This document shows, piece by piece, positions 1-56,800 of a stretch of 64,000 nt of DNA (positions within the stretch are counted from its first letter, which is position 1; the number at the start of each line of letters is the position of its first letter). A model generated the notes under the pieces. The model was given only the letters and a program-made list of their open reading frames with translations. It was not told where the DNA came from and made no database searches. A program made the position numbers and the translations under genes. The stretch lies in contig OZ004615.1 of NCBI GenBank assembly GCA_963924565.1, forward strand, positions 7,502,001 to 7,566,000, written 5' to 3'. The stretch comes from Ascidiella aspersa. Its lineage: Eukaryota.

Positions 1-3000
1 ACTCAAAAACAAGAAAATATTAAATCTGCTAAAGCGAGTCCAAAGACCACACAGGTAACCTCAGAAGAAAGTGTTACTAAATTAGCCTCAAAGCAAGTGA
101 CCGAGACTGAAACGGTACCGAAAGTGGAACCACAGGTTGATTCACTGTCACTTAAAACACACGAACAATCCGAGGTGGTTGTTGAACAGAGGATTGGAAT
201 GACAAAACGATCTCCGACCGCCAAGGAAATGACGACAGCCCTGGCTTCTCTAACCGACAATATGTCGAGAGACGAAAAAGAAGTGCCACCAAAACGTACT
301 CCCGTTATTCCCGGGGCAGAAAAGGTTACCGAAGAAGCTGTGCAGCCTAAAGACAGACGAGAGGCCAGTGTCGATGTTGAGGTTGATGACCTGCCTCCGA
401 AAGAGGTATCCCTCGATCAAAAGCAAACTACTAGAAAGGTGTCTGCGCAAACATCAACCACCGTGACCACTCAGGAAATTAAAACGACCAAACGTGTTTG
501 GAATCCAAAGACCCGGCAATTCGACGAGGTTGCAATCGAAAAGTCGACCAAAACAACTTCGGACACCAAACAGAAACCAAAGAGTGTCACAGAGATTAAG
601 GAAATCAAATCTGACGAATCACGTTTACAGGAATTACACGACGCTACAGCCTTAACGCAAACTGTAGACGAAGTTAGTGTGGAGACATCGTTCACTGACA
701 CTCCGTCTCAACCTAAAGAGTTGGAGAAGTCAAAATCGCAAATCGATATTAAGCATTCAACGCCAGAAGTAAAACTAGAACCGGAAACAAAGCATAATAT
801 TCACGTTGAAACGTCTAAACCGGTCAGTGTTTCAACTAAATCTGAAACAGAAACGGTGCCATCTGCTGAACCGAAACAAAAATCTGACGAAGAGAAGCCA
901 CGAATGACGTGGAATTCTAAAACGCGGCAATTCGAGGAGGTACTTTCCGTTGTTAAAGTTCCAACGTCGAAGGCCACCGCTCAGGAACCTGCCAAAGTAG
1001 ACATTCCAACGGTCGAGGAACCAAAACCAGCCGTGACCAAGCCGCATGCTGAACCAGAGACTGCATTCCAGAAGGTTCCGGTTGCGACCGAACCGCAAAC
1101 TGCTTTAACCGGGGACGAATATGTTCAGCCCGTGTTTCGGGATGTTAAAACCGGGAAGGTAGACAAACAGGACGTGGAAAAAATACCGATTAAGACGTCG
1201 GGCAAGTCTAAAGAATTAACACTGTTTTTAACTGACGCGTTAGTGGTTGATCAACCACAACAGGGAAAAGTTAAACAATCTGAACCCTCCCAAGCTCTTA
1301 AAGTTGCCGAAGAGCCGATTTATAAAAAGGATAGGGAGACGGTTGCAACTAGCATTGATGCACCTACTTCACCAGAGCAAACAATTCCAGCCGCTGTTTC
1401 CAAAAGCGTTAAAATTGGGGAAGTTGCAACTATTGAAGTAAAAGAAACTCATGAAAGGATATCTGGTGATGCTTTATCGCAAGAAGAAAAGAAAACCAAG
1501 AGGGTTTGGAATCCTAAAACGCGACGCTTCGATGAAGTTATAGTTGAAATCTCAACAACAACAAAAACTCAAGATTCTAAACCGAAAAAGACAGCAAAGC
1601 CTTCCCCAGCGAAAACCGAAGAAATAGCTCCAGAAACAACCAAAGCACCAAAAACTGATATTCAAGTAAAAGTGACCGAAATGCCAGAAACTGATACAAG
1701 TGTTCAGACTGAATTGGTATCGTCAACAAAACCTGGTGACGAGGAGATTATACATCCTATTACTTTGGGTGTAAAACCTACGAAAACAAAGGCCATTTAT
1801 AAAACATCCGCTGTGGAATCACTTACCGATGCAATGTCTATAAAGGGCATTCAACCGGAACCAGTTTCATTGCCAAGCGGTGTTGCTGTTACAGAAGATT
1901 TAGTTCAGCCAAAAGATAAAGATTCTGTTGATATTTCTGTCCCATATGAACCTACACCACCCGAGGAAATCCCGGTCGGTAAGTCCCGCGAAGACATTAA
2001 GATGACTGAAGAGGCTGTCGTCACTTCGGAAATTACTACCCAGAAGAAATCTGGCGCCATCGTTTCGCAGGAAGTCAAGAAAACCAAGAGGATTTGGAAT
2101 TCCAAAACTCGGCAGTTTGACGAGATTGAAATTGAAATTTCAAAGACTGTGGAAACCGCCGAAGTTAAACAACCACAAAAAGCGAAACCAAAGAAGGAAA
2201 AGAAGTCCCCAAGTGACACTGCCGCTTTGGATGTAGAACCACAGTTCGATGCGAAACCTGAAGATATCACGCAGCCTAAAATTGCAATTGATGTCGAGAT
2301 TTCATCAGTGCAAAGTGTTTCCGAGGAGGTTTCAACTAAAGTTGGTTCTGAAGAAATCATTCTCCCGGTACGTCAGCATGGCAAACAGGAAAAGTCAACG
2401 AAAACTCTGGACAAAACTTCCGCCATTAACTCTCTGACCGACGTAATGTTTGTGGAGAAAACCGAACCTAAACCGAAATTAGCCAAATCTCCAAGTAGTC
2501 CAACAGTGACCGAAGATACGGTTTTACCGAAGGATAGAGAGTCTATAGAGACTCCTGTTGACTATAAACCGACTCCACCCGAAGATATATCAGTAGCTGA
2601 GTCGCAGGCAGATGATGTTCAAGTTCCCGAGGATACGCAAATAACCAAAGATGTGACAATGCAGAAGCAACCTACTTCTGTTCTCACACAAGAAACCAAG
2701 AAAACCAAGAGGATTTGGAATCCAAAAACTCGACAGTTCGATGAGGTCAAAATTGAAATTTCAAAGACGTTGGAAACCATCGAAGTTGAACAATCAGAAG
2801 AAGCGAAATCTAAAACGAAAAAGAAGGGCCCAAGTGCTTCTGTGACTTTCGAAACCGAGCCTCAAGTCGATATCAAACCTGACGAAACAAAGACGCCAGA
2901 AATTGCAATAGATGTCGAGATTTCATCAGCGACCAGTGTTTCTGCGGTAGTTTCAACTGAATCTGGTAAGGAAGAAACTATTCGTCCAGTCCTTAAGGAT

Positions 3001-6000
3001 GGTAAATCGGAAAAGGCCACCAAAGCTGTTGATAAAACGTCGGCTATTGGCTCCCTCACCGACGTAATGTCTGTGGAGGAAATCGAACCGAAAAAGAAAT
3101 TGGCCAAATCACCAAGCTCTCCAACAGTGACTGAAAATACGGTTTTGCCAAAGGATAGAGCACCCGTTAATATTCCTACTGACTTGGAACCGACACCACC
3201 CGAGGATATATCAGTAGATAAGTCGCGGCCAGATGATGTTCACGTTACCGAGGAGACGCAAGTAACCAAACAAGTGTCAAACCAGAAGAAACCTACATCT
3301 GTTGTTACACAAGAAACCAAGAAAACCAAGTTAATTTGGAATCCGAAAACTCGACAGTTCGATGAGGTCGAAATTGAAATTCCAAAGACGTCGGAAACCA
3401 TCGAAGTTAAACAGCCACCAGAAACGAAATCTAAAAAGGAAAAGAAGGGCCCAAGTGCCTCTGTGACTTCAGAAACCGAGCCTCAAGTCGATATCAAACC
3501 TGAAGAAACAAAGACACCAGAAATTGCAATAGATGTCGAGATTTCCTCAGCGACCAGTGTTTCTGCGGTAGTTTCAACTGAATCTGGTAAGGAAGAAACT
3601 ATTCGTCCAGTCCTTAAGGATGGTAAATCGGAAAAGGCCACGAAAGCTGTTGATAAAACTTCTGCCATTGGCTCCCTTACCGACGTTATGTCTGTTGAGG
3701 AAATCCAACCGAAAAAGAAACTGACCAAATCACCAAGCGCTGTATCCGAAGACACGGTTTTGCCAATAGATAGAGCATCTGTTACCATTCCTACTGACTT
3801 TGAACCGACACCATCCGAGGATAAATCAGTAGCTAAATCACAGCCATATGATGTTCAAGTTACCGAGGAGACGCAAATAATCAAGGAAGTGACAATACAG
3901 AAGAAACCTACTTCTGTTGTTACACAAGAAACCAAGAAAACAAAGATGATTTGGAATCCTAAAACTCGTCAGTTTGATGAGGTTGAAATTGAAATTTCAA
4001 AGACCTCAGCAGCCACCGAAGATAAGAAACCACAAATAGATAAACCAAAGAAAGAAAAGAAAAGCCCTGATGTTCCCTTACTTTTAGAGACAGAGCCACA
4101 AGCTGATGCTCATACTAAAGAAACCATGGAACCCGAAATTGCAATAGATGTCGAGATTTCATCCGCGCCTAGCGTGTTTGCAACCGTATCAACTAAACCT
4201 GGTAAGGAGGAAATAATTCGCCCTGTGCTTAAGGACGGAAAACTGAAAAAGTCCTCCAAAGCTGTAGACAAAACTTCTGCTATTGGCTCCCTCGCTGACG
4301 TAATGGCTGTAGAGGAAATCGAGCCAAAACAGAAAGCAATTAAATCGCCCAGCGCCCCAATGGTGTCTGAAGACACGGTTTTGCCGAAAGATAAAGCGTC
4401 TATCGACACTGCTGCTGACTTCGAACCGACACCACCCGAGGATATATCAGTAGCTAAGTCGCAGGCAGATGATGTTCACATTACCGAGGAGACGCAAATA
4501 ACCAAGGAAGTGACAATGCAGAAGAAACCTATGTCTGTTGTTACACAAGAAACTAAGAAAACGAAGAGGATTTGGAATCCCAATACTAGACAGTTTGATG
4601 AGATTGAAATTGAAATTTCAAAGACCTCGGCAACCGCCGAAGTTAAGAAACCACAAGTAGATAAACAAAAGAAGGAAAAGAAGAGCCCTGATGTTCCCTT
4701 ACTTTTGAAGACCGAACCACAGGTTGATGCTAAATCTGAAGAAACCATGAAGCCGGAAGTTGCAATTGATGTTCAGATTTCTTCAGCGCAAAGTATTTCT
4801 GAGGCAGTTTCAACTGAATCCGGTAAAGAAGAAACTATTCATCCAGTCCTTAAGGATAGTAAATCAAAAAAGGCCACCAAAGCTGTTGATAAAACTTCTG
4901 CCATTGGCTCCCTTACCGACGTAATGTCTGTGGAGGAAACAAAGCCTGAACAGAAATTGACCAAGTTAAGCGCTACAACCGTTACCGAAGATACGGTTTT
5001 GCCAAAAGATAGAGCATCCGTTAACGTTCCTACTGACTTTGAACCAACTCCTCCAGAAGCAATATCAGTTGCTAAAGCACAGGCAGAAGTCGTTCAAGTT
5101 ACCGATGAGATGCAAATAATCAAGGAAGTGACAATGCAGAAGAAACCTACTTCTGTTATTACACAAGAAACTAAGAAAACCAAGATGATTTGGAATCCAA
5201 AAACTAGGCAGTTCGATGAAGTTGAAATTGAAATTTCAAAAACGTCAGAAACTATCGAAGTTGAAAAACCACAAGTAGCGAAATCGAAAAAGGAAAAGAA
5301 AGACACTGATATTCCGGTAATTTTAAAGACCGAACCGCAAGTTGTCGCCAGACCTGAAGATACCAAGAAACCCGAAATCACAATAGATGTCGAGATTTCG
5401 TCATCGCAAAGTGTATCTGAAGCAGTTTCAACAGAATCCGGTAAGGAAGAGACTATTCATCCAGTCATTAAGGAGGAACCGCGTAAATCCACCAAAGGAG
5501 ATGAAATCGTAAAACATAAACCAAAAGACAAAGGGGGAGCGATTTCGACCAACGCTTTATCGGTAACAAAACCTCAATCCGAGGAATTTGAATTAAAGCC
5601 ATCTACAAAGACTCCTATTGTTGACGAAGAACCAATACAATTGGAAAACAAAGATGCAGTCGAGGTTGGCATTTCAGTTCTTGTTACACCGGCATCTCCA
5701 ACCATTGCAGAGGTCAAAACGCCATCGGCGAACGAAAAAATCGAAAGCCTTTCGACAAAGCCAGACATTACAGCTGCTCCTGATTCTACCAAAGTCTTCA
5801 TTGAAACACCACATGTTCCCTCTACAGCTGACAAGAAGGTGGTCACGACTATCGATAAATCCGCAGTAAACGATCTTGTACAGGTTACAAAACCTTTGCC
5901 TGAAGAGAAAACAGCTGTTGTTGTGTCTACTGACGGAAGTGTGCTGACAAACGAAACTACAATCAGCAAAACAAGCCGTTCTGTCGTTACACAAAAAACA

Positions 6001-8866
6001 AAGAAGTCTAAACAGGTATGGAATCCCAAATCTCGCACATTTGACGAGGTGGTTTTGGAAGTTTCGTCCGAAACGTCTAAAGACGAAAAACAAATCCTTT
6101 CACTGGAAAAAGACGAAGCTAAATCGTCTCCCCCTCAGGTAAAGGAACTATCTGCCGCTCAAGCAAAACCTGACACCGTAGTTGTTGGCATAAAACCCCA
6201 AGAGGATAAAGCCTCACCCTCGCCAGCCTCTCTGTATACAGTTAAGAAAGACACGCCTTTAACTGGAACTGAAACGCGTCCTACTGTCCCTCAAGAGTTA
6301 GATGCAGATAGTACACACGACGTTGTATCTACAATAGTCACACAAACGTACTCAGATGACAAGACTCTTTCCAGCAAGGACATGCATCGGTCGACTGAGA
6401 TGGCATCAGTTACCAGCCAGGTTTCTGTTCATACAGATGCGGGTTCGGCGGTTTCGAAAACCGTCCTTAAAACCAAACGAGTGTGGAATCCAGTCGCTGG
6501 GAAGTTTTTCGAAATTACCATTGAGGAACCGGTGCAAAGCGAAGATCACGATGAGCTTGAAGCAGAGAAACAGTCGCCATTATTTGAGGAAACCTCGCTT
6601 CATGGGCTTCCGACGACAGAAATGCAACATGAAAGCAAAGAAGATACACAAAAAAGTTCAAAACTCATGACAGAGAAGCCGAAACGAAGGGTGTCTTTTA
6701 AAGAAGACTTGGTCAGTGAGGAGAGCGACGAACTAAAAGATCGTGACGTCACGGAATCGAAAATGGTAGAAAAATCCAAACAGCCAAAGCTACCGACCGC
6801 AGCCTTAGAACAAAAAGAAGTTCAAATTAAAACATCAATTCCTGGTGAACCAGATACCGCAGTTGCAAAGGGCCAATCGCGACTAGCGACGGAGGTTAAG
6901 GTTGCTGAAACCGCAACAGAGGAAATAGTCAAAGTTAAGGTACGTGAAGAGGAAGTGGCCGCCAAAGTAAAACCAGCGTTATCTGTCAAGGGTAAGACAA
7001 AAATCTTGGATTCCCTCACAGAAGTAATGACAAGCAAACCGGGCGATGATACGCCGAAAAAAATAACGGACATACCAGATGTTAAAGAGGAATCAGAAGA
7101 GAAAATTGAGCCAAAGGACAGGGCGTCTCTTGTGAGCGGCTCTAGCAGCGACGACGTAACACCGTTAAATGACGAGTTTGCTAAAACCTCTATTAAATCT
7201 CAATATGATGATGTTCAACGAACTGAAAAACCAAAGATGGTTTGGAATGCAAAGACAAGGCAATTCGATGAAGTCACCGTTAAGGTGAAAGCTGCTGAAA
7301 CTGAACCTGAGAAGACCAAGGTAAAAACATCCGGTCATGTTAAAAAGGCGACCGATGTCGACACGGCTGAAAAGGCTGTTGTAGAAACCAAGAAAGAGGT
7401 TAAAGTGGCGAAACAGCAAATAAAGGATGTGAGCCCTGATACTACTGAATCAATTATTCCATCTGATCGGAAAAATAAGGAGAGTAAAGCCGAAGTCGCT
7501 GTTACACAATTTGAAGAAGAAAGTGTTGTTTTAACGAAAAAGGAGAGCGTTCGAGAGAAAGAAACCCAACCAGATGAACTTATTGCCCCTGAAACCCTTG
7601 ATTCGACGACCGTCAGCAAATCCCAGTCCGCTGAAGTTAAAATTTCTAGCGAAAAGTCAACAGTCGAAAGTGGCCAACATGTGAAAACCACAACAAAGAA
7701 AACTAAAATGACCTGGAACCCGAAAACTCGTCGCTTTGACGAAACAACTGTGGAAGAAGAGGTTGAAATCACTCTTCCGGTTGACAAAGATGTAAGTTTG
7801 AAACCCTCAGTTTTCACAGAAGCTACTCAGCCTGATGATATTAAAGTTATGACTTCTATTGAGGACATTAAAACTAAGCCCAAGGTGGTTGAACGTAAGA
7901 AAGGTATTGTGGAAAGAACGAAATCGCCTATTGACGACGACGAAGTGTTTGAGGAACGAGTTCGCACCAAAACAGAAAAGAGCGAGGAAAAAGTAAAGCG
8001 CGTTTGGAATCCCAAAACGAGCCAATTCGATGAAGTAAAAGAGAAAGGCTTTGACATAACCGAGTCGCGAGACCAATCCAAAAAAGACTCCAAGAAAAAA
8101 TCGATTGATTCTGACGATTTACTGGAGATGGACGTTCGTGACATTCAACAACCAGTCGTTACAACCACAATAAGCGATATGAAGCAAGGAGGTTTTGACG
8201 GTTTAGGTGACAGCTTTGCCTTCAGCAGCCATTTTAGCAGCACCAGTGAGAGCTTCGTGACCACATCATCGCAGGACGGTGTCAAGCGGACTGAGACAGT
8301 CAAGAAATCGACCCGGGTCTGGAACCCACGAACTGGCAAGTTCGAGGAAACTACATCAGAAGAGCGGCATTACGAAACTGAGGACCGTCGTCAGCAGACG
8401 CCGCAAGTAACCGAGAGGGAGCGTGAAATTCAAATCGATATAGAATCTGCGCCTAGAATTTTAAAGCCCGCCGATGTTGATCGTAGCCAGCCGCATGTAA
8501 CCGATGCAGAGCGCGACATTCCAATCGATGTCGAATCTTCGCATAAGGCCTCTATTGCGCCTGACGTTTCGCAGCCTCCTCTGTTCTTGAGAAACATCCA
8601 AGGCGAGACTGTGGAAGAAGGCTCCATGGTAACATTTAGCTGCAAGATAAGCGGTTCTCCATTGCCGTCCGTGCAATGGTTCGTAAAGGGAATCGAGATC
8701 GTGGCGCCCTGCGACGGTTTCACGCTGGTGTCGGATGACGACACCGGCGTATGCAACCTCGTGGTGCAAAATGCCAGTCTCAGTCAGGACCAGAGCAAAG
8801 TGGAATGCCGCATCGCCAACAATTGCGGCTCGGCTGATTGTAGCGCTCTGCTCCGAGTTCGAAAGA
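1..8866 (+). CDS. Giant titin exon (5' truncated): low-complexity T/E/K/V/S/P-rich repeats plus one C-terminal Ig
   Basis: Frame 1 open from base 1; Ig PPLFLRNIQ..FSCKISGSPLPSVQWF..ECRIANNCG..LRV; donor GTGAGT at 8867 (phase 1). Confidence 0.9.
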
Positions 8867-11800
8867 GTGAGTTTAACCGCGACATCCATCAATTCAAACT
8901 TCGTAACATATGCCGAAAACATATCCAAAAATGTCATAAATTTGAAATCACTAAGGCATATAATTTTTATCCAACTGATTTTTTAAGTAAAATGTCAAAA
9001 AATGCCCAGAAAATAAGTTAATACTATACATATTAAAACTAACTATTTTGTATTCGATTAGTGATTAGACAATACGAAAATTATCCGCTTCCATCTATCA
9101 CTTCATTATTATATTGGTCACAAAAACACAGTCATCTGGAAATAACCATCACTTTATTAAAACTTTGTCATTAACTCCTCAAATTTATACAGAAAAATCG
9201 GCCACGAAAAAAGAAGCGGCAAAGCACTTAGAGGTGGAAAAATTAAAGGCACCTGAGATTGTTAAGCCGCTTCAAAATCAAACAGTCGTCCAAAACACCA
9301 AAGTCGTTCTCGCGTGCGAAATAAACGGCCACCCCGCGCCGCGGGTTACGTGGTTGCACAACGGCCAGCCAATGAGAGGCCGCCACGTCAGGGCCGGTTC
9401 CTCGTCGATCCAATCGGACGAGCCGAGGACTGATTCAGTCATGAAGTTGAATCTGACTCTTGGGCGAGTGACTGACAAGCAAGCCGGCGTTTTTGAATGC
9501 CGGGCCAGCAACGAGCTGGGTACAGTTTCTACAAGCGCGACTCTAGTGGTGGTGGCTGAAAATACCGCTCTTCCGCCAGGTGGCGTTGTCACATCATGAG
9601 TGTTCCATTACCTAAGCTCATGCACGCAGCCATCGCCACTACGTTAGAAATAGAGAAATATAAGAGATTTGTACCGGTGTTGTTTACTGAAAAATTACAA
9701 GATTTATTTTCACTCATACTACATCATGTGTAACTTCACCTCACTGGTAAAGAATATCCAACTTTAATTTGTTCTCTTTGTCGATTCAGGGCTCTTCGAA
9801 TCACCTTTGCAACCAGAGGAGACTGAACAAGTTGAAGAAGGTAAGACGCACAAAAAACATAATCATTTGCAATCATTTTTAGGTATACACGAGTTTGTAG
9901 TTTTACCGCTGCACGTAGGCACATTTTGTTTACGGGTTTAAGGCTGCCCCATTTGCACCTGTGGTTGATACTTTTGCTATAAACAAAATCTGCCTACTTG
10001 CAAAACATTAAAGTTATAAAAACATGTCGCCATTTCATCACCTTTTCTATTCGCTTTGCGTTCTTATTGTTTCCTTTGCTTTGACTACTCTTTTTGCGAC
10101 GCTTTTCGCTTCTTTGATATCAGTTCGGTCAAGAGCAAGAGCAATTTTACAGGGTAAGTGGGGTATCCTTTCCTTTCTTTCTATCTTTGTAAACCTAGTT
10201 GATCTACGCTAGTTATTGTTAACGGTTAGGATGTTGGTCAAATGTGTTTTACCAGTGACAGTAGGTACTTGTTGTTTGTTTACTGATATAAGAACGCATA
10301 CCAAGTTGTTTAACGTTCGGCAGGTTTTTCGATGCAACAGTATGATTCCGATAATCAGTTGCACGTAAGAAGCTCAATGACTGGCAAAGAATTCACAATA
10401 CAAAGGTCGGAGGTTAGCCGCCTGGTCGGCAACTACATTACACAGTCGGATATTGACCCAAGTCTCACGGATATGCCAATTCTGTCGAGGTGAGTTTCCT
10501 TAAAAATTTCGCCTTTAATAATCCCCTTGTGTGAAAATTGAAACCAAACAAAAAGTATACGTTCGGTAAACATTAATATTATAATATGATGTATGGCATA
10601 GTTTGACACTTTATGATTTTTGGGACACTTTTATTTTTTATTTTTTCGTTGAATGATTTAATCATAATGCATCACGCGAATTTTCAGATTAATGAACAAA
10701 AAATGAGTAATTTTAAAGGATTTCCTTACAACCCGTTTTCTACAAAGTAGTAGTTTCTTATTGAAAATCTTTTCAGCGTTTCATTAAACCTTATTGAGAT
10801 TTGACTTACAGTATCCAAAAAATGTTCGGTGTCGATTGCGTTTTACAAGTCTTGATTGTTTTACAGAACGAAGCCAATAACAGAGCTGGACGACGACCTG
10901 ATAAGACCGTCCTTTATACAAAAGCCGAAACTGCAGTCGGTTCTTACCGAAGCACACGTGAGGTTCGATTGCCGATTTGTGGCCTCGCCTCGACCCAAAG
11001 TAATCTGGCTTCATTCCGACGCTGAAATCAAGGTAAGGGGTTTAAAACTAGTCTTAAACATCGGTTATAATAAATGTTGTATGCGGCTTATGTTTTGGAT
11101 CGCTTTTGAATAGTTGAAAATGGGCAATTTATTAATCGGTTATTAAGGTCCCCATAAATCGCGAATAATATTTAATAAATTTAAAAAATATGGCTGCTGA
11201 ATCTCTGGGGTCAAAACGCCAATTTTAGGCTCATATTTGATTTCAAATTTAAAAATTAAATAAATACAAACGCCTAAGACGTTGTAAATTTTTAAGACTT
11301 TCTAATCTATCGTACAATTTAAATATTGTCTAAGCACCCACTAAAACGAATACATCTAAATTCAGTGGCCCATATTTACAAAAAACAAAACTGACTAAAA
11401 TTTTAATTCTTTTTGCAGGCGACCAATACCCGTTACAAAAGCACCCTGGAGCGAGATCTATTCTCCTACCAAGCCTTCCTTGACATTGACGGGTGCCAGT
11501 CGGACGACGCTGGCATCTACAAAGTGGTGGTGCGCAACCGTGAGGGGGAGGCCAGTGCCTCTGTCCCCCTGCTGGTAACTGACAGGGCGCGGTCCCAGGC
11601 GGACCGGGAAAGTCCCGTGGGTGCGAGTGAGCCAAGGCCAGTGTTGAAGCTTAATCTGGACTCAACTACTGAAAGCGACTCCCCTGCTAAAACAGTTTCG
11701 GCCACTGGGATCGCGATTACACCAAGACAGCCTTACTCGGCGCGGAAGTATTATGAGCGGAAAGAACGCGAAAGCAGGTCTAACAACGTTACGGATCTGA

Positions 11801-47800: not shown

Positions 47801-50800
47801 TCTTACATCTTCCGCTGTTTCGCAATCAATGAAGCTGGAATAAGCGAACCCAGCGTTCCAACCAAACCGATTGTCGCAAAGGAACCAGATTGTAAGTGCA
47901 CAACCTCAAACAACTAATATTTCGTGGTTTAACCGACCGTCAATAATCAAATCGTTGCCTTTTGCTGTACAGCGGCTCCCACAATGGAGATGGTCCGTGA
48001 CGAGATTATTCTCGTCTCCGGCGAGAAGCTGCGCGTCCGTGTTCCGATCACGGGTTCACCAAAACCGACCTTGGAATGGACAAAGGACGATAAGCCCGTC
48101 AAGGAATACGTCAAGGTAATTAAACATATACCGATAATTTTATAATCTTTCTACCGTTTCTAAACATTCTGTAGTTCGTCTCAATTATGATTCTTTAACC
48201 TATTTTATGACGTTTTTGTTTTAGTCTTCCTTCGAGGATAACTGCGTCACCATGTTTATCCCGGCCACTACACGCCAGGATAGCGGGAGATACACGCTGA
48301 CTCTGTCCAATAAGATGGAAACCATCACCGGATGGTGTCTTGTGCGCGTGCTCGGTAAGAATCAGACCAACTCTCATTACCAAGGATTCGCTATTCAGTG
48401 TATAATGCTGTCGTGTTTGTGTTGCAGACCACCCGGGACCACCGACCGACTTTGCTGTTTCCGACATTACGAAGTCGACTTGCCAACTAAACTGGTCTGA
48501 GCCACAGGACGACGGCGGTGCCGAGATTCTTTTCTACTCCGTCGACAGGTACAAAATATAAACTTTACGATAGCTTATATACAATTTTTGTTCATGCTGG
48601 TAAATTAAGGTTTAACATTTTCTTGTTATCGAGGATGACTAATCTGTCCGTATGATGATAATCAACGTTGCCTTTATTTAACAAGGGTTTTGGAACATCA
48701 ATTTTGATGAATTTGTTATGTCTTCTTTCCAGGCGCGAGTCCGGTCGTCGCACCTGGACCCCGGTGGTGGCTGAGGTCCGTAAGACCTCCTGGAAGGTTA
48801 CGGATCTCCTCCACCGCAACGAGTACAACTTCCGTGTGATCGCGCACAACAAGGTCGGAGCCGGAAAGTCGGCCGAGCTCGAGAAAGAGATCATGGCAGT
48901 TGATCCTCTGGCTCCTCCAGGCGCGCCGGAAGAGCTACAGTGGAGCGACGTCCGCTCCAAGTCGGTAATTCTCTCCTGGAAGAGGCCCTTAACTGATGGC
49001 GGATGCGTGATCACGAGCTACATCGTCGAAATGAAAGAGAAAGCGGCTGAGGATTGGAACGTGGTTATCAGAGACCACGAGTCAACTTCGGTTACTGTTC
49101 TCGGACAAACCGAAGGTAAGGAGTACTTGTACCGCGTTGCTGCTGTCAACCGCATCGGAGTAGGACAACGAGCCGAGACCGCCCAGTCAATCCAAGCCAA
49201 GGACCCGCTGGCTCCTCCAACTGTTGTGCTCGCCGAGCACCTTCAGCGAGGAATCGAGGTGCGCGCCGGCAAGCCACTCGTAATCGCCGCCGATTTTACC
49301 GGAGTCCCGCGTCCCACCATTAAATGGACGCAGCAGGACAAGGTGGACAGGCCAGTGACCGACAATAAGGAGCGCGAGATTGCTTTAATTACTGAAGATG
49401 GGAGCACAACGCTTAGCGTACCAGATGCGGCGCGAAAGGATAAGGGCAAGTACCTCATTGTTGCGGAAAACGACCAGGGCAAGGCCTCTTGTACAGCGGT
49501 TGTGAACGTGCTTGACGTGCCGGCCATCTGCAAGCCGCCGTGGTCGTTCGAAGACGGCACCAACGAAGCCATTACGCTGCGCTGGAAGGCACCTGAAGAC
49601 GACGGCGGCGCCGACATCATCAACTACGTGCTCGAGTTTAAAGAGTCAAACAAAAAGATGTGGACCAACATCTCGACCACTGTGCAGTCGACCAAGATGC
49701 GCGTCACCAAGCTGGTCGAAGGCAAGGAGTACGTGTTCCGCGTGTGCGCCGAGAACAAGATGGGCAAGGGCGCGTGGCTCGAAACGGCGCCCTACATCGC
49801 TAAGTTGCCGTTTGACGCGCCAGCAGCGCCCGAAAAGCCAGAGTACGTCGACGTGACGCGTAAGGCCATGACCCTGAAGTGGAACGAGCCGCAGGACGGA
49901 GGAAGCACCATCACCGGTTACTGGCTGGAAAAGAAGGACTCGCAGTCGACACGCTGGACCCGCGTGAACCGCGATCCGATCCGCACCTTGGAGTACCAAG
50001 TGGCAAGCGGTATTACCGAAGGCGCAACTTACCAGTTCCGCGTTTGCGCCGAGAACGAGGCCGGTTGTGGCAAGTTCAGCGCTGAGAGCGACTACCGAGT
50101 CTGTGAAGACCCGGTTACCGCGCCCTCGTCGCCGCGCAAGCCGCACGTGGAGGACACAACAAGCAGTTCCATCCTTCTTGTTTGGGATCGCCCGGAGGCC
50201 GATGGCGGCGACGCCAAGTTGAAGTACTTGGTCGAGCAGCGGCTTTCCGACGGCTCGTGGAGCGTCTGCAGCGACAAAGATCTGGAAGCGACCAGCTTTA
50301 CGGTCAAGAACCTTCAGGAGGGATTCATGTACTCCTTCCGCGTGTCGGCGCTTAACCGCGGCGGCACCAGCAAGCCGACCAACGTCCCAGAGGCGGCGGC
50401 CAGGGAAATGATCGACCTGCCGCAAGTCGAACTGGACGCAAGCGTCGCCGATGGCATCACTGTGATCGCAGGCAAAACCATTTCGCTTCCGGCCAAAGTG
50501 ACTGGACGTCCCTACCCGGAGGTGACCTGGACCAAACAGGGCGACGCTGTTTCCGAGCGATTCGCCATTTCCAAGACCGATCAGGGTTCGCTCGCGACGC
50601 TGAAGAAATGCGAGCGCGCCGACTGGGGCGAGTACAAGGTCACGGCCAAGAACTCGAGTGGCACGAAGAGCGCCACTTGCATGGTTGTGGTCCACGACGT
50701 CCCAGGAGCTCTAAAGGACCTCAAGACGGGAGCCGTAAGCCGCAGCTCGATTACACTGAGGTGGCACGCACCGGAGGACAACGGCGGTCTGCCCATCAAG

Positions 50801-53800
50801 AAGTACCACTTGGAGAAGCGTGATATGTCAATGCGAGCCTGGTTGAGCGTTGGCAGCACTGATAAATTTACATTAGACGTGACCAACGTGCTTGAGGGAA
50901 CCACTTACGCGTTCCGCATCTGCGCTGAGAACGCGATGGGCCGCGGCGCCTTCACCGAGTCGCTGGCCGTGCTTTGCCAAGAGCCAATCATGGCGCCAGG
51001 ACGCCCGGAGAACCTCCGCGTCGAAGAGCGTCGCGACACCGAAATCGCACTGCGCTGGTCGCCACCGCGATCCGACGGCGGCAGCAAGATTACCGGTTTC
51101 GTGATCGAGAGCCAGCTTGAAGGCCAGGAGGAATGGGCCCCGTGCAATCGGCGCCCGGTCACCGAGAACCGCTTTGTCGCCGACGGGCTGGAAACCGGCA
51201 AGAAGTACATTCTCCGCGTTCGTGCGATTAACAACGTCGGCGAAGGTCAGCCAGCCCTGACTGGACTTACACAGGCAAAGGAACCAGACGCGGCGCCACA
51301 AGTCAGTCTCAGCGTCGGCGTCAAGGGCAACTTGCAAGTGCGAGCTGGCGAGAGCGTCTACCTACCGGCTACCATTAGCGGGGTTCCAGCCCCCGAGGTT
51401 ACCTGGCTCAAGGGTGAAAGCCTTCAGGTTACGGAAAGCGACGCGCTCAAGTTGGTGCGCGAAGACAAGCAGCACGCGATCTTCATCGAGAAGTGCGCTC
51501 GCTCGGATGACGGTCAGTACGCAGTGACCGCGGTCAACTCGCTAGGCAGCGCAACAGGCCGTTGCACGGTCACTGTGCTGGACGTACCGTCCGCGCCACT
51601 CGACTTCAAGCCGTCTAAGGTGACTAAGGACAGCATGTTGCTCACTTGGCAAACGATGAGCGACAACGGCGGCGCCGATCTGATGAACTACGTGCTGGAG
51701 AAGCGCGAGGGCAAGAAAAAGGTCTGGGTGCCTATCAGCTCCACCATCATCGACACAAAGTACAGGATGACGAAACTCACTCCCGGCATGGAATACCAGT
51801 TCCGCGTTGCCGGCGAGAACAAGCTCGGAATCGGCGTGTTCGCTGAGACCGAGGTAATCGTCGCCAAGGACCCATTCGACCTGCCAGGACCTCCTTCGAA
51901 GCCCGCGGTTTCCGAAGTCCACAAAACCAGCGCCTTCGTATCCTGGCAACCACCACGCAACGATGGCGGTGCAGAAATCGAAGGATACTGGCTCGAGATG
52001 CGGGAATCCAACTCCGCCCGCTGGAAGAAGATGAGTCGCGCCCCGATCACCAAGCCTCCTCTGGTGGACTGCTCATTCCGAGCCCTCCAGCTTCAGGAGG
52101 GACTCGAGTATCGCTTTAGAGCTTGCGCGGTTAACAAGGCCGGGAGCGGACCCTTTAGCGAAGAGTCGGACGTCGTGGTGGCGGAGGACCCCATCTTCCC
52201 TCCAGGTGAGATTCCAACGCTCACTATTGCCGACATCACCGCCACATCGGTGACTCTGGCCTGGGAGGCTCCTCAGAGCAACGGAGGCAGCGACATCCTC
52301 GGCTACATCGTCGAGTATCAGGACCAGGTATCGTGCGAGTGGAAGAAACACGTGGTCGGCGACCAGGAGCTTGTTAAAGGCACCGGGGTCGAGATCCCGG
52401 AGCTAAAGACCGGGCTCAAGTACAAGTTCCGGGTCACTCCCGTCAACAAAGCTGGAAGTGGAAAGCCGTCGGTTGAAACCGATTTCACTGAAGTCAAGGA
52501 CCAAATTCGTAAGTGCAACCTTTATAAAGTCACTCGGTTTTCATTGCAATCCACCTTGTTTGATTAAATTAACATTCATTTATAAACACTTTAGTTGCGC
52601 CCGATATCACGCTTGACGTGGGCGTCCAGAACAGCTTGGAGGTGACAGCTGGTTCATCGATCAAGCTATTTGCAACCATCAAGGGTCGTCCTGTGCCTGA
52701 GGTAAGTTCACAAGCATGACTCTGCTTTCATCTTTAACTACATAACTGGACATATGCTTAGATTTTATCTGAAAAGCGCCAGATTAATATTCCATAGTTA
52801 CATCTGACGCTAAGTAAAAATGTCGAATATTTCTTATCCGTTATCCAAATTTATAGGCCTCATTAAAATTGTAAGCGCATCGTTTTCTCTATTATTACAA
52901 CCCTATGCTTAATAAACACTTAAAATTATTTCCAGACATCTTGGGAAAAGGACGACAAGCAGCCGCTGCCGACGAGCGCCGTGGTCAAATCGACCTCAAG
53001 CACTTCGGCCGTCACAATCCCCAAGTGCGGGCGTGAGGACAGCGGACGCTACTTCGTCGTGTGCAAAAACGCAGGCGGCACGCGTACCGCTTCCTGCAAG
53101 GTCCTAGTCAAGGATACACCAGGCGCGCCCGAGGCTCTTGCCGTGTCCAACGTTACCAAACGTTCGGCGAAACTCACCTGGAAGCCACCGACCAACAATG
53201 GAGGCTCGAAGATCCAGACCTACATCATCGAGAAGAGGAGAGGTGACGGTCGGGGATGGGTCAAGGTTGAGTCCTCCGTGTCCGCCACGCAATTTAACGT
53301 ATTGGATTTGCTGGAGGGTTTCGAGTACTTCTTCCGCGTCTGCGCAGTCAACGCCATCGGCCAGGGAGTGCACGCCGAAACCAGCGAGCCCGTTTTAGCC
53401 AGGGACCCCGTTTCGGTGCCCGAGCCCCCGTCGCATTTGCGCGTCACCGGGGTGACCGGCAGCAGCGTGACCCTGCGCTGGAACGAGCCCCAGCTTCTCG
53501 GGAATCTCCCGCTCAAGACCTACGTCATCGAGCGTCTGCAGCGCGAGAATTTGTCTGGCGATGTGGCGCTTGAGACGCAAGTGGTTGAAGAACAGGCGTC
53601 GGCACTTCTGGTGGCCGAACAGAAACGACCGGCCGTGAGAAGGCAAAGTTCCCTGCGCGGCGAATCATGGATCAGGTGCTTTAATTATATTATTGTACAA
53701 ATATAAAAGTAGAACTTCAATGAAAAAATTAAAAGGAGTATTTTTAACCAATTTACTAAAACTGATTTTCAACCAATTTACTCAATTGTTTGAAAATTAG

Positions 53801-56800
53801 ATGGCCAGTCGTTTAATCCCCATGTCTCGTTCATTTTGCAGTTGCAACCCGGAGAAGGTGACCGACACCGCTTTCACCGTGACCGACCTAGACTCTTCGG
53901 TTAAGCACACGTTCCGCGTGTTGGCCGAGAACGAGTGCGGAATGAGCCGGCCATCCAACCACGTTGGCCCCGTGCTTTGCAAGGACGACCTCGGTAAGCT
54001 TTGAGGCGGAAAACGGATTAATTTCCCTACTTTGTATCACTAAATGTGTTTTTAACGACATATTCTTCGTAGTCTATCCAACCATTGAGACGGTTGAGTT
54101 CAAGGAACTCGAAGAAGGCGCCGTGATTGATTTGTTCGCCAAGTTCAACGGAAAACCGATGCCGGAGATCAGCTGGAAAATGGAAGACGACGAAGACATT
54201 AAGACGTCGGATAGGTTCGTGTTCCTACAAATACTCTATGACGAGAAACTAAAACTAGGATAGTTTTTCAATTTTTTTGCTAATGAACATTCTTCAACAG
54301 GCTGAGCATCGACACCAAGGAAAACTCTACCAACTTGGTGGTGCAAAAGTCCATCCGCAAGGACACCGGCATGTACCGCGTCATCGCCAAGAACGCGGCC
54401 GGGCAGACGACCAAGAACATCAAAGTCAACATTCTAGGTAAACCAAATCTCTATACGACATACCACAAAAATGTTAATAGTCATCGAAAAGCAAATAGAC
54501 AGATTTCGACTTGCTATTTAACACTATTTTTCAACACAGGCAAGCCTTCGGCGCCTCAGAAGCCGCTTAGTTACAGCTCGGTTACTGCCAGCGAGATCAC
54601 TGTGTCCTGGTGTCCTCCGGAAGATGACGGCGGAAGCCGCATCACCTGCTACACCGTCGAGAGGCGTGAGGAAGATCGCGATTACTGGCATTCGGTTGCC
54701 GACTCAAAGGATCTCAGCGCCACTTCGACCGGACTCAAGAAGGGAAAACTTTACCGCTTCAGAGTCAAGTGAGTACTGATTGTAAAACTGAAATGCAAGA
54801 TTTTCTTTGAAACAAGTTGAGTCAAAAACTACAACTGAAGTTTACATTATATATGCAGCACCTATTATTTCGTACAAGATGCTTTTTCGAAGTGTGGTCA
54901 TAAACTATTGCCGATTTACAAATAGAGTTAGCACTACCAGGCAACATATCAATGAATATAAATCGCTCTTCTGGTGTAAACGAAGTATAAACTTTTGCCG
55001 ATTTACGTTGCATGCACTCTTTATCACAATCAATGACAGTTACTGCAAATGTAGCACACATATTGACAAACAACATGTAGCTTACGAAATCTATATCAGT
55101 TTTTAACACATTTTTTTAATATGTCTTTCCCTATGATAAAATTGAAATCGTTCTGCCTAGGGCCGTGAACAAGTTCGGATCAAGCGCCTGGACCGAGTCG
55201 GATGAAGCGTGCGAAGCCAAGAACGCGTACGAGTGCGCCGACGCGCCAAGCCAGCCGAGCGTGTCGGGCGTAACACGCGACGCCATGACGGTGATGTGGA
55301 ACGCGCCGAACAGCGACGGCGGCGCCGTAATCTCAAACTACGTGCTGGAGAAGCGCACTCGCACCAAGAAGAAGTGGAGCAAGGCGACTTCGGATGAAAT
55401 CGGAGGCACCCAGTACCGCGTTCGTGGCTTAAGAGAAGGCGAGGAGTACATGTTCCGGGTTTCGGCGGTCAACGCAGCCGGTCAGGGCGAGTTTTCGGTT
55501 CCCAGTGAACCGGTGCTGGCCAGCGTGCCCATCACCCCTCCCGGCCCGCCGTTCCCGAGCGTCCGCGACACCACTGCCTCCACCGCGAGCATCTCATGGG
55601 TGGCTCCGGACTGCGACGGAGGTTCCAAGATCAAGGGATACGTTGTAGAGCAGAAGGAAGAAGAAGCCGAAGAGTGGACCAAGGCGACCAGCCACGAGCT
55701 GCGATCGCTTGAGTTCGTTGTACCTAACTTGAAAACCGCGAAGAAGTACTGGTTCCGTGTCATCGCCGTCAACGCGGCTGGACAAGGTGAGCCAGGATGC
55801 GTTGCGGAACCTGTCGTAATCCAGGAGCGTGTTGAAGAACCCGAAATCGTTCTAGACGCTTCCATAAAGGAGCGCATTGTCCTAAAGGCCGGAGGTCTTC
55901 TGAAGATCCCGGTTTCCGTAAAGGGGCGACCAGCGCCTGAAATCACTTGGCAAAAGGACGGCGCCGAGTTACCAGAGGACGCTAGGCTCAGCGAATCCGC
56001 TTCGAGCCCGGTCCTTACCATCCGCGGCTGCCAGCGCAGCCATTCCGGAAAGTACTCGGTTATCGTGAAGAACCAAGCCGGCGAGAGACAGCTCAACGTC
56101 GAGGTAGTAGTCCAGGACGTGCCCGGAGTTTGTGGAGGACCGATAGTGCCTTCCAACGTTACCCGGGACACGATCGGATTCGCCTGGAGCCCACCGGAAG
56201 ACGATGGCGGCTGCGCGATCACCAACTACGTGCTGGAGAAGCGCGAGTCGTCCCGACGATCCTGGACCAAAGTGTCGATGACCGTTACTCGTACCTCGGC
56301 TGTTGTGCAAGACCTTGTCGACGGCGAGTCGTACATGTTCCGCGTCTCCGCTGAGAACTTGATCGGTGTAGGACCTCCGATTGAGACATCGGTGCCGATT
56401 AACGCACGCGATCCAGTTTCGGAGCCGAGCCGCCCGGAGGACCTGCGTGTCACTGACGTTACCAAAGCGACGGTGAGTCTCGCCTGGAAGGCGCCAACAT
56501 CCGACGGAGGACTCCCGATTACGGAGTACACCATCGAGAAGCGCCTGGTCGGCCAGGAGCGCCAGCTTCCCGCTACCGACAAGATGATTCGCGACACCAA
56601 AGTCACACTGGACGGCTTTAACGAGGGAGACAACTACGAGTTCCGCGTTTTCGCCAAGAACGAACGCGGAGTCAGCCTGCCTTCCTTCCCAACGAAGCCT
56701 GTCGTTTGTCGGGACACGATCGAGCCTCCATCACTTCAGCTCGAGGCCAGGGATAAGCTCACGACACGGGTCGGCGAGCCGTTCCGCGTTCTTGCAAAGA

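What the first reader, a model, noticed from the sequence alone, without database searches (positions are those of the whole stretch)
490..8352. Fifteen (R/M)xWNPKTRQFDE motifs in a disordered giant exon, resembling designed beta-hairpins
Seen: 15 copies (Trp codons include 499, 1507, 2095, 2716, 3337, 3952, 4573, 5191; last RVWNPRTGKFEE near 8320). They hold nearly all the Trp in ~2800 low-complexity residues and persist where the flanking repeat has decayed, which implies selection on the motif. Known: aromatic-NPATGK-aromatic is the loop of stable engineered hairpins of the GB1m/HP5 type. Inference: natural micro-hairpins acting as force-unfolding elements or multivalent binding sites, a spring design I do not recognise from vertebrate titin.
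Basis: partly seen in the sequence, partly recalled or inferred. Interest (0 to 1): 0.75.

Follow-up and report, generated by a model that had tools for sequence, protein, structure and literature searches.

The report
Conserved tryptophan hairpin motif in sea-squirt titin
A 20-28-residue tryptophan motif recurs 17 times in the floppy spring part of a sea squirt's titin muscle protein, is kept in other sea squirts better than the folded domain next to it, and is predicted to fold into a tiny beta-hairpin whose job is still untested.

Summary
Frame 1 of window 1-8866 is part of a 4297-codon open exon of a tunicate titin gene. All 15 Trp in its disordered part sit in a motif, consensus KKTKR(V/I)WNPKTRQFDEV.IE. 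Two more copies lie just upstream, making 17.

- **Location:** a profile and a DNA pattern find the motif nowhere else in the 308-Mb genome.
- **Selection acts on the peptide:** Arg uses six codons, and dN/dS is 0.10 in the motif against 0.33 in the rest of the unit.
- **Relatives:** a profile search of 1.84 billion proteins found it in only eight other proteins. These are orthologous exon products, and the only named ones are from Ciona intestinalis. No vertebrate or amphioxus titin was hit.
- **Conservation:** between species the motif consensus is 60-85% identical, where the neighbouring Ig domain is 35-39%.
- **Structure:** AlphaFold2 predicts one ordered element in a 220-residue unit, a hairpin with Trp and Phe paired across an N-P-K-T-R-Q loop. 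The loop resembles the engineered GB1m2/GB1m3 hairpins.
- **Known families:** no Pfam family, solved structure or paper matches the motif.

Function is untested. I favour structured docking sites (0.35) over purely mechanical micro-folds (0.30).

The parts
1..8866 (+). In-window part of a giant coding exon of a titin gene. It is open from window -3872 (4297 codons) and encodes K/E/T/V/S/P-rich sequence predicted to be disordered.
   Evidence: Searches show the open frame. One search finds no Pfam family in residues 1-2840. One search gives mean pLDDT 48 with no secondary structure outside the motif. The end at 8866 is inferred from GTGAGT at 8867-8872 and was not seen in RNA.
1458..5463 (+). 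Tandem array of six to seven super-repeat units of 615-621 nt (about 206 residues), each with one motif.
   Evidence: families D1, D2, D3 and D5; unit alignment.
469..552 (+). Motif copy (Trp codon 499), predicted hairpin span -10..+17: KTTKRVWNPKTRQFDEVAIE.
880..963 (+). Motif copy (Trp codon 910): KPRMTWNSKTRQFEEV.
1477..1560 (+). Motif copy (Trp codon 1507): KKTKRVWNPKTRRFDEVIVE.
2065..2148 (+). Motif copy (Trp codon 2095): KKTKRIWNSKTRQFDEIEIE.
2686..2769 (+). Motif copy (Trp codon 2716): KKTKRIWNPKTRQFDEVKIE. This is the sequence folded.
   Evidence: predicts strands 12-18 and 23-29 with pLDDT about 80.
3307..3390 (+). Motif copy (Trp codon 3337): KKTKLIWNPKTRQFDEVEIE. It is the centre of the 220-residue unit folded.
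   Evidence: predicts strands 101-112 and 117-128, with a pLDDT block of 86.
3922..4005 (+). Motif copy (Trp codon 3952).
4543..4626 (+). Motif copy (Trp codon 4573), WNPNTRQFDEI.
5161..5244 (+). Motif copy (Trp codon 5191).
5989..6072 (+). Motif copy outside the array (Trp codon 6019): KKSKQVWNPKSRTFDEV.
6454..6537 (+). Most divergent copy (Trp codon 6484): KTKRVWNPVAGKFFEI.
7213..7296 (+). Motif copy (Trp codon 7243): KPKMVWNAKTRQFDEV.
7684..7767 (+). Motif copy (Trp codon 7714): KKTKMTWNPKTRRFDET.
7975..8058 (+). Motif copy (Trp codon 8005): KVKRVWNPKTSQFDEV.
8290..8373 (+). Last motif copy (Trp codon 8320): KSTRVWNPRTGKFEET. Its loop is the closest to the engineered NPATGK loop.
8584..8859 (+). 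I-set immunoglobulin domain that ends the exon. Its orthologues end P0001-P0004 and P0006.
   Evidence: PF07679, E 2.1e-13; best solved relatives are titin Ig domains 6fwx and 3b43. Also.

Best explanation
Each copy is a self-contained beta-hairpin micro-module set in an otherwise disordered titin spring.

**Predicted anatomy.** A basic strand (..KKTKR-V/I-W) and an acidic strand (F-DE-V-x-V/I-E) are joined by the loop N-P-K-T-R-K/Q. They are clamped by a cross-strand Trp/Phe pair and by Lys/Arg-Glu pairs.

**Proposed function.** The 9-22 hairpins per molecule act as structured, multivalent docking points for a conserved I-band partner. The first candidate is the thin filament (F-actin), met by the basic strand and loop tip. 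The second is a neighbouring titin chain. Because docking would need the folded hairpin, a few piconewtons of tension would unzip it and release the contact. The array would then add load-dependent drag or cross-links to the spring.

**Shown computationally.** The motif, its exclusivity to this exon, selection on the peptide, conservation across tunicates and the predicted hairpin.

**Inferred only.** Folding in solution, the existence and identity of a partner, and gating by force.
For: **Gene identity.** The Fn3/Ig exon at 48668-52567 matches human titin in thick-filament structures 8g4l and 8q6t (E 3.5e-206 and 6.9e-202).

**Exclusivity.** All 17 profile matches in the genome lie in this one frame. 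All 13 pattern hits lie there too, against 1 for the control.

**Selection on the peptide.**
- W, N, F and E(+9) are identical in 17 of 17 copies. Meanwhile Arg(+5) uses 6 codons, and Pro(+2) and Thr(+4) use 4 each.
- Among six tandem units dN/dS is 0.10 in the motif (dS 0.61) and 0.33 elsewhere. The lowest dN window lies on the motif.

**Cross-species conservation.**
- 8 of 38 profile hits are orthologous exon products with 1-22 copies each, 82 copies in all counting the window's own 17. The named ones are Ciona intestinalis.
- The only 14-residue windows of the 4297-residue product that score 30 or more in all six larger relatives are the 17 motifs, 17 of 17 peaks.
- The motif consensus is 60-85% identical to the relatives' consensus. 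The adjacent Ig domain is 35-39% identical.
- Unit architecture differs between species: 206 residues here, alternating 100 and about 169 in P0001, about 165-190 in P0003. The units were therefore re-expanded independently, but always with the motif.

**Hairpin.**
- AF2 on the 36-mer gives strands 12-18 and 23-29, pLDDT about 80, with 6 residues at 90 or more.
- In a 220-residue unit the only secondary structure is 101-112 / 117-128 with a pLDDT block of 86. No other ten-residue block exceeds 62, and outside blocks 101-120 none exceeds 56.
- 69 of 79 distinct copies have a net positive first strand and a net negative second strand, mean +2.9 and -2.8.
- The other profile hits are known beta-strand-turn-strand repeats: 28 WD40 proteins and one GBS Bsp-like repeat protein.
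- The loop resembles GB1m2/GB1m3, which are 74% and 86% folded at 298 K according to PMC2696411 section 3.4.

**Hint of a partner.** The exposed loop residues are kept: K(+3) in 57 of 79 copies and R(+5) in 64 of 79. Gly at +5, the residue used in the engineered loop, occurs in only 2 of 79.
Against: - No partner was identified, and no tool here can test binding.
- The AF2 alignments are shallow (17 and 15 rows) and made of paralogous copies. AF2 may over-call hairpins in short alternating peptides. Mean pLDDT is only 65.8 and 48.4.
- In a marginally stable two-stranded fold nearly every residue may matter for folding. Strong conservation therefore does not by itself demand a partner.
- My register test is weak. 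The AF2 register ties with a shift of -1 for opposite-charge pairs (0.19 each), and shifts of +3 and +4 give more hydrophobic pairs.
- Spacing between copies is not conserved between species, so no fixed period matches a filament repeat.
- RNA support is thin: 30 read mates, depth about 1-2, tissue unknown.
- Whether the exon is in the main muscle isoform is unknown.
Confidence: 0.35

Rival explanations
1. Purely mechanical micro-folds. The hairpins bind nothing. Each hides roughly 24-28 residues of chain and unzips and rezips at low force. This gives the entropic spring extra hidden length, hysteresis and compaction at rest.
For: It rests on the same fold evidence as the best explanation. Small autonomous folds need almost every residue, which could explain the conservation. 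Arrays of identical mechanical units are the rule in titin, as in the Ig and Fn3 exons downstream.
Against: - 17 hairpins hide only about a tenth of the exon's residues (17 x 28 of 4297; my arithmetic), so the mechanical gain is modest.
- Trp and Phe are never swapped for other aromatics, in 79 of 79 copies each.
- Basic residues at the exposed loop positions are kept, although Gly at +5 is the stabilising choice in the engineered peptides.
Confidence: 0.3
2. A long linear motif without a stable fold of its own. It is disordered when free and is recognised in extended or induced form by a partner or a modifying enzyme. The predicted hairpin is an AF2 artefact.
For: - The motif sits in a long disordered region, where short linear motifs are typical.
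- AF2 confidence is moderate only.
Against: - About 14 conserved positions over 22 residues is much larger than a usual linear motif.
- The charge complementarity of the two halves holds in 69 of 79 copies.
- The aromatic-loop-aromatic pattern shared with peptides experimentally shown to fold is hard to explain without a hairpin.
Confidence: 0.2
3. No selection on the peptide. The copies look alike only because the repeat is young, or because the DNA or RNA is constrained.
For: Six units are a recent tandem array with 67-83% DNA identity.
Against: - Synonymous sites are scrambled: dS 0.61, with six Arg codons in use.
- Copies persist where the flanks are 23-35% identical.
- The motif is shared with species whose Ig domain is only 35-39% identical.
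Confidence: 0.02

Closest known systems
Engineered GB1-derived hairpin peptides GB1m2 and GB1m3 (sequences and folded fractions read in PMC2696411, Table 1 and section 3.4)
   Same: An aromatic residue, then N-P-x-T-x-K, then Phe. There are basic residues at the N-terminal end and an acidic residue at the C-terminal end, and the paper attributes GB1m3's extra stability to charge-charge interactions. AF2 puts the tunicate motif in the same Trp/Phe-across-a-six-residue-loop register.
   Different: The tunicate motif is natural, occurs in 9-22 copies inside a giant muscle protein, and has longer predicted strands of about 12 residues. It has Arg or Lys where the engineered loop has Gly (64 + 9 of 79 against 2 of 79). 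Folding in solution is untested.
PEVK spring of vertebrate titin (PPAK and poly-E modules; recalled knowledge, with only the listing of PMC7691732 seen)
   Same: A repeated short module with patterned charge, inside the disordered extensible segment of titin N-terminal to the A-band.
   Different: There is no PPAK or other Pfam match. P+E+V+K is only 42%. This motif has an invariant Trp and a predicted hairpin. It is encoded in one giant exon rather than many small ones (the latter recalled). No vertebrate titin was hit by the profile.
WD40 repeat (PF00400), the strand-WD-turn-strand stretch
   Same: Sequence pattern K/D-T-x-R-I/V-W-N-x-x-T-G-x. 28 of 38 profile hits are WD40 proteins matched over profile positions about 3-23. 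In WD40 this stretch is a strand, a tight turn and the next strand (recalled textbook knowledge).
   Different: There is no GH...WD 40-residue periodicity and no propeller. No WD40 match appears in the window protein. Copies are 97-276 residues apart.
Elastic repeat regions of invertebrate titin-like proteins (C. elegans TTN-1 PEVT and other repeats, crayfish I-connectin, amphioxus connectin; only the reference list of PMC12198301 seen; content recalled)
   Same: Lineage-specific repeat modules in the I-band spring of a titin-family protein.
   Different: None of them was hit by the motif profile at E <= 0.001. I know of no Trp-hairpin module described there. The ascidian connectin paper (Hanashima 2012, PubMed 22245513) is not held and could not be checked.

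Membership tests
Titin/connectin (the gene that carries the motif) | A-band super-repeats of Ig and Fn3 domains homologous to vertebrate titin | tested here: met
   Window 48668-52567 has 10 Fn3 and 3 I-set stretches. Its best solved relatives are human titin in 8g4l and 8q6t, E 3.5e-206 and 6.9e-202.
Titin/connectin (the gene that carries the motif) | C-terminal kinase domain and M-band region | not tested
   These lie outside the window and were not fetched.
Titin PEVK region (PPAK / poly-E modules) | Match to the PPAK repeat model, or about 28-residue P/E/V/K-dominated modules | tested here: not met
   No Pfam family at E <= 1 other than one chance row. P+E+V+K is 42.3%. The unit is about 206 residues.
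WD40 repeat (PF00400) | Tandem units of about 40 residues matching PF00400 and forming a propeller | tested here: not met
   No PF00400 hit in window residues 1-2840, nor in P0001, P0005 or P0015. Motif spacing is 97-276 residues.
GB1-type autonomous beta-hairpin | Cross-strand aromatic pair flanking a six-residue loop of the N-P-x-T-G-K type | tested here: met
   W and F are present in 79 of 79 copies, N in 78, P in 71 and T in 57 (+16 S). This was compared with the sequences in PMC2696411 Table 1. Gly at +5 occurs in only 2 of 79 copies, so the loop match is partial.
GB1-type autonomous beta-hairpin | Predicted or observed hairpin in that register | tested here: met
   AF2 predicts strands 12-18 / 23-29 (W17 opposite F24) and 101-112 / 117-128. 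This is prediction only.
GB1-type autonomous beta-hairpin | Substantial folded population of the isolated peptide in water | not testable with these tools
   This needs CD or NMR of a synthetic peptide.
GBS Bsp-like repeat (PF08481) | Match to the 92-residue repeat model | tested here: not met
   Only P0017 carries it. The window protein has no such match.

The most novel reading that the evidence does not exclude
The motif is a natural, autonomously folding beta-hairpin of about 24-28 residues. That would make it among the smallest natural folding units used as a mechanical element. It would work as a force-gated docking site: folded at slack length, it tethers the titin spring to the thin filament or to neighbouring titin chains. 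Above a few piconewtons it unzips and lets go. The number of engaged hairpins would then report and tune sarcomere strain. This would be a tunicate invention with no counterpart in vertebrate titin.
Probability: 0.2. Interest if true: 0.85.

Novelty: new variant of a known kind. Interest (0 to 1): 0.6.

Why it matters
Titin springs are thought to work through two things: disordered segments (PEVK, N2B unique sequence) and the unfolding of 90-100-residue Ig domains. A conserved, Trp-clamped micro-hairpin repeated along a disordered spring would be a third kind of element. It would be intermediate in size and probably in unfolding force.

It is unusually easy to test, because a 24-28-mer peptide and a few-unit construct suffice. 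It would also be a natural counterpart of the engineered hairpins used as folding models.

For tunicate genomics there is a practical gain. The motif profile recognises the orthologous titin exon, which current Ciona gene models split and name "proteoglycan 4-like" or "uncharacterized".

Tried and rejected
**Searches that led nowhere.**
- Tandem Repeats Finder gave 0 rows because the unit of about 618 nt exceeds its longest period of 500. The repeat finder showed the array instead.
- The search for homologous proteins with window 5689-9021, residues 1-950, scored 8000 candidates and found none at E <= 0.001. The low-complexity words probably swamped the candidate list, so this blank says little.
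- The ESM Atlas gave no usable hit.
- The profile against solved-structure sequences gave 0 matches at E <= 10. Chains under 20 residues, such as hairpin peptides, are not in that set.
- Paper searches for the motif strings returned 4 unrelated papers.
- "titin + ascidian + PEVK" returned 2 papers, neither on this (listings only).
- "beta-hairpin/titin/PEVK/tryptophan" returned 64 papers. None of the 12 listed concerns such a motif (listings only).
- The ascidian connectin paper (PubMed 22245513) is not held. That paper, and supplements in general, could bear on whether the motif was noted before.

**Readings considered and rejected.**
- A calmodulin-type 1-8-14 site (Trp at 1, Phe at 8). Position 14 is Glu in 62 of 79 copies, Pro follows the Trp, and the C-terminal half is acidic.
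- N-glycosylation or a secretory Trp modification. The protein is cytoplasmic, and N-P-x or N-S-K is not a sequon.
- RNA- or DNA-level constraint.

**Inconclusive.**
- The charge-pair register test.
- The lineage-specific blocks of the unit (SLTDxM-like, PKDR-like, PTPPE) occur only in this species, so I did not count them as part of the conserved element.

**Not done.**
Exons were handled one at a time.

Full report
**What is there.** Frame 1 of the + strand is open from before the window's first base to 9021. Reading the 10 kb upstream on the same contig shows one open frame of 4297 codons starting at window -3872.

The last folded element is an I-set Ig domain at about 8584-8859. Its closest solved relatives are titin Ig domains. 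A GTGAGT at 8867-8872 is the likely splice donor, in phase 1 (inferred, not seen in RNA).

Downstream lie further Ig exons. From about 46 kb there are Fn3/Ig exons. The exon at 48668-52567 has 10 Fn3 and 3 Ig stretches and matches human titin in the cardiac thick-filament structures 8g4l and 8q6t at E 3.5e-206 and 6.9e-202.

The gene is therefore a titin orthologue, and the giant exon lies N-terminal to the A-band part. Earlier scan notes call the organism a sea squirt. The only named relatives I found are Ciona intestinalis proteins.

**The observation.** The window translation has 16 Trp. Two more copies lie at window -704 and -50, so the exon has 17 copies holding 17 of its 20 Trp.

The 17 copies align without gaps over 36 residues, with W, N, F and E(+9) invariant. 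Six to seven units of 615-621 nt form a tandem array at about 1458-5463. The other copies lie in sequence that is only 23-35% identical to an array unit.

The motif is confined to this exon. A degenerate DNA pattern gives 13 hits in 308.6 Mb, all here, against 1 for the reversed control. A protein profile gives 17 matches, all in this frame, among 23 scored candidates.

**Selection.** Codons differ freely where residues do not. Arg(+5) uses six codons, Pro(+2) and Thr(+4) use four each, and Phe, Asp, Glu and Asn use both of theirs.

Among the six tandem units dN/dS is 0.10 in the motif (dN 0.062, dS 0.61) and 0.33 in the rest (dN 0.235, dS 0.72). The lowest dN of a sliding window lies on the motif. 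The whole unit is under some constraint, and the motif is under the strongest.

**Relatives.** A profile of the 17 copies was run against 1.84 billion representative proteins and gave 38 hits at E <= 0.001.

Eight are clearly the same exon in other animals: P0001-P0006, P0015 and P0026.
- The long ones start with the same HISHV.TRL stretch and end in the same Ig domain.
- They carry 22, 9, 13, 9, 5, 4, 2 and 1 copies by a strict pattern. Together with the window's 17 that makes 82 copies.
- P0005 and P0026 are Ciona intestinalis XP_026691853.1 ("proteoglycan 4-like") and XP_078489335.1 ("uncharacterized"). The others are unnamed.

The remaining 30 hits are 28 WD40 proteins (28 of 29 scanned), one GBS Bsp-like repeat protein and one other bacterial repeat protein. 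No vertebrate or amphioxus titin appeared.

Sliding a 14-residue window along the 4297-residue product, the only places with an ungapped score of 30 or more in all six larger relatives are the 17 motifs (17 of 17 peaks).

The per-species motif consensus is 60-85% identical to the window's. The neighbouring Ig domain is only 35-39% identical. Consensus smoothing flatters the motif figure somewhat.

Unit length and the number of motifs per unit differ between species. The other conserved blocks of this species' unit are absent elsewhere. The units were thus re-expanded independently, always keeping the motif.

**Structure.** AlphaFold2 on the 36-mer with the 17-row alignment predicts strands 12-18 and 23-29 around the turn P-K-T-R, with W17 opposite F24. 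pLDDT is about 80 there, with six residues at 90 or more; the mean is 65.8.

On a 220-residue unit with a 15-row alignment, the only secondary structure is a hairpin at 101-112 / 117-128. Its pLDDT block is 86. No other ten-residue block exceeds 62, and outside blocks 101-120 none exceeds 56; the mean is 48.4. The rest of the unit serves as an internal control.

Over 79 distinct copies from all species, the first strand is net +2.9 and the second net -2.8, with this polarity in 69 of 79 copies. In the predicted register, positions -2/+9 are oppositely charged in 41 of 79 copies and -6/+13 in 54 of 79. A register-shift control was not decisive.

PMC2696411 (Table 1 and section 3.4) lists GB1m2 and GB1m3 with Y-NPATGK-F. 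It reports them 74% and 86% folded at 298 K and attributes GB1m3's gain to charge-charge interactions.

The WD40 cross-hits cover the strand-WD-turn-strand stretch of that repeat. Its topology is recalled, not tested here.

**What it is not.** No Pfam family covers the motif in the window protein or in P0001, P0005 and P0015. No solved-structure sequence matches the profile at E <= 10. The Atlas gave nothing. No paper in the held library contains the motif strings in a relevant context. The 2012 paper on Ciona connectin is not held.

**Expression.** One RNA run of the same species label gave 30 read mates on window 4000-9700, from about 6% of the run read. All first mates lie on the - strand. 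They cover 19 of 30 bins at depth about 1-2, with no joints. This is consistent with + strand transcription of an unspliced exon, but it is thin and the tissue is unknown.

**Mechanism.** I take the hairpin fold as likely (about 0.65). For function I put three readings:
- Structured multivalent docking, possibly released by tension: 0.35.
- Purely mechanical micro-folds: 0.30.
- A long linear motif without its own fold: 0.20.

The main argument for a partner is the retention of exposed basic loop residues and the near absence of Gly at +5. The main argument against is that a marginal mini-fold may need every residue. No step beyond sequence and prediction was shown.

**Verdict.** The finding is a real, strongly selected, tunicate-wide motif of titin's spring exon. 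It is predicted to form a charge-zippered Trp/Phe hairpin and matches no described family. I class it as a new variant of a known kind, namely repeat modules in titin springs, with interest 0.6.

Noticed in passing
window 1-5463 (unit blocks), e.g. residues aligned: Besides the Trp motif, the unit of about 206 residues carries further blocks (SLTDxM-like 10 times, PKDR-like 9 times, PTPPE 7 times). They occur only in this species' protein and 0 times in P0001-P0006, apart from one PKDR-like hit in P0003.
   Followed up: partly
P0001-P0004; loose relic near window 5698: A different short repeat (R-P-A/S-S-P-I/V-I/V-H-A followed by ..P..E) recurs in the orthologous exon of other tunicates (1, 3, 4 and 3 regex hits). 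It is all but absent here. Unexplained.
   Followed up: no
window 1-10000 versus 48000-64000: Within one gene, the giant exon has GC 0.42-0.45 and AT skew up to 0.30, while the Fn3/Ig exons have GC 0.52-0.60. This is a strong difference in codon composition between the spring and A-band parts.
   Followed up: no
P0005 and P0026 (Ciona intestinalis XP_026691853.1, XP_078489335.1): Public Ciona gene models split the orthologous titin region into separate proteins named 'proteoglycan 4-like' and 'uncharacterized'. P0026 even begins inside a motif copy.
   Followed up: partly
upstream of the window, G000:C9 about 7498100-7501000 (L009): The N-terminal 1000 residues of the same open frame are rich in TQT / QT-type triplets (17 TQT in the whole frame). 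The relatives P0001-P0005 also carry 6-13 TQT.
   Followed up: partly
window 4000-9700: RNA run X4 gave 30 read mates, all with the first mate on the - strand. Of these, 18 are only partly on the stretch and 19 are 95-99% alike, which may reflect allelic or strain differences, or the repeats.
   Followed up: no
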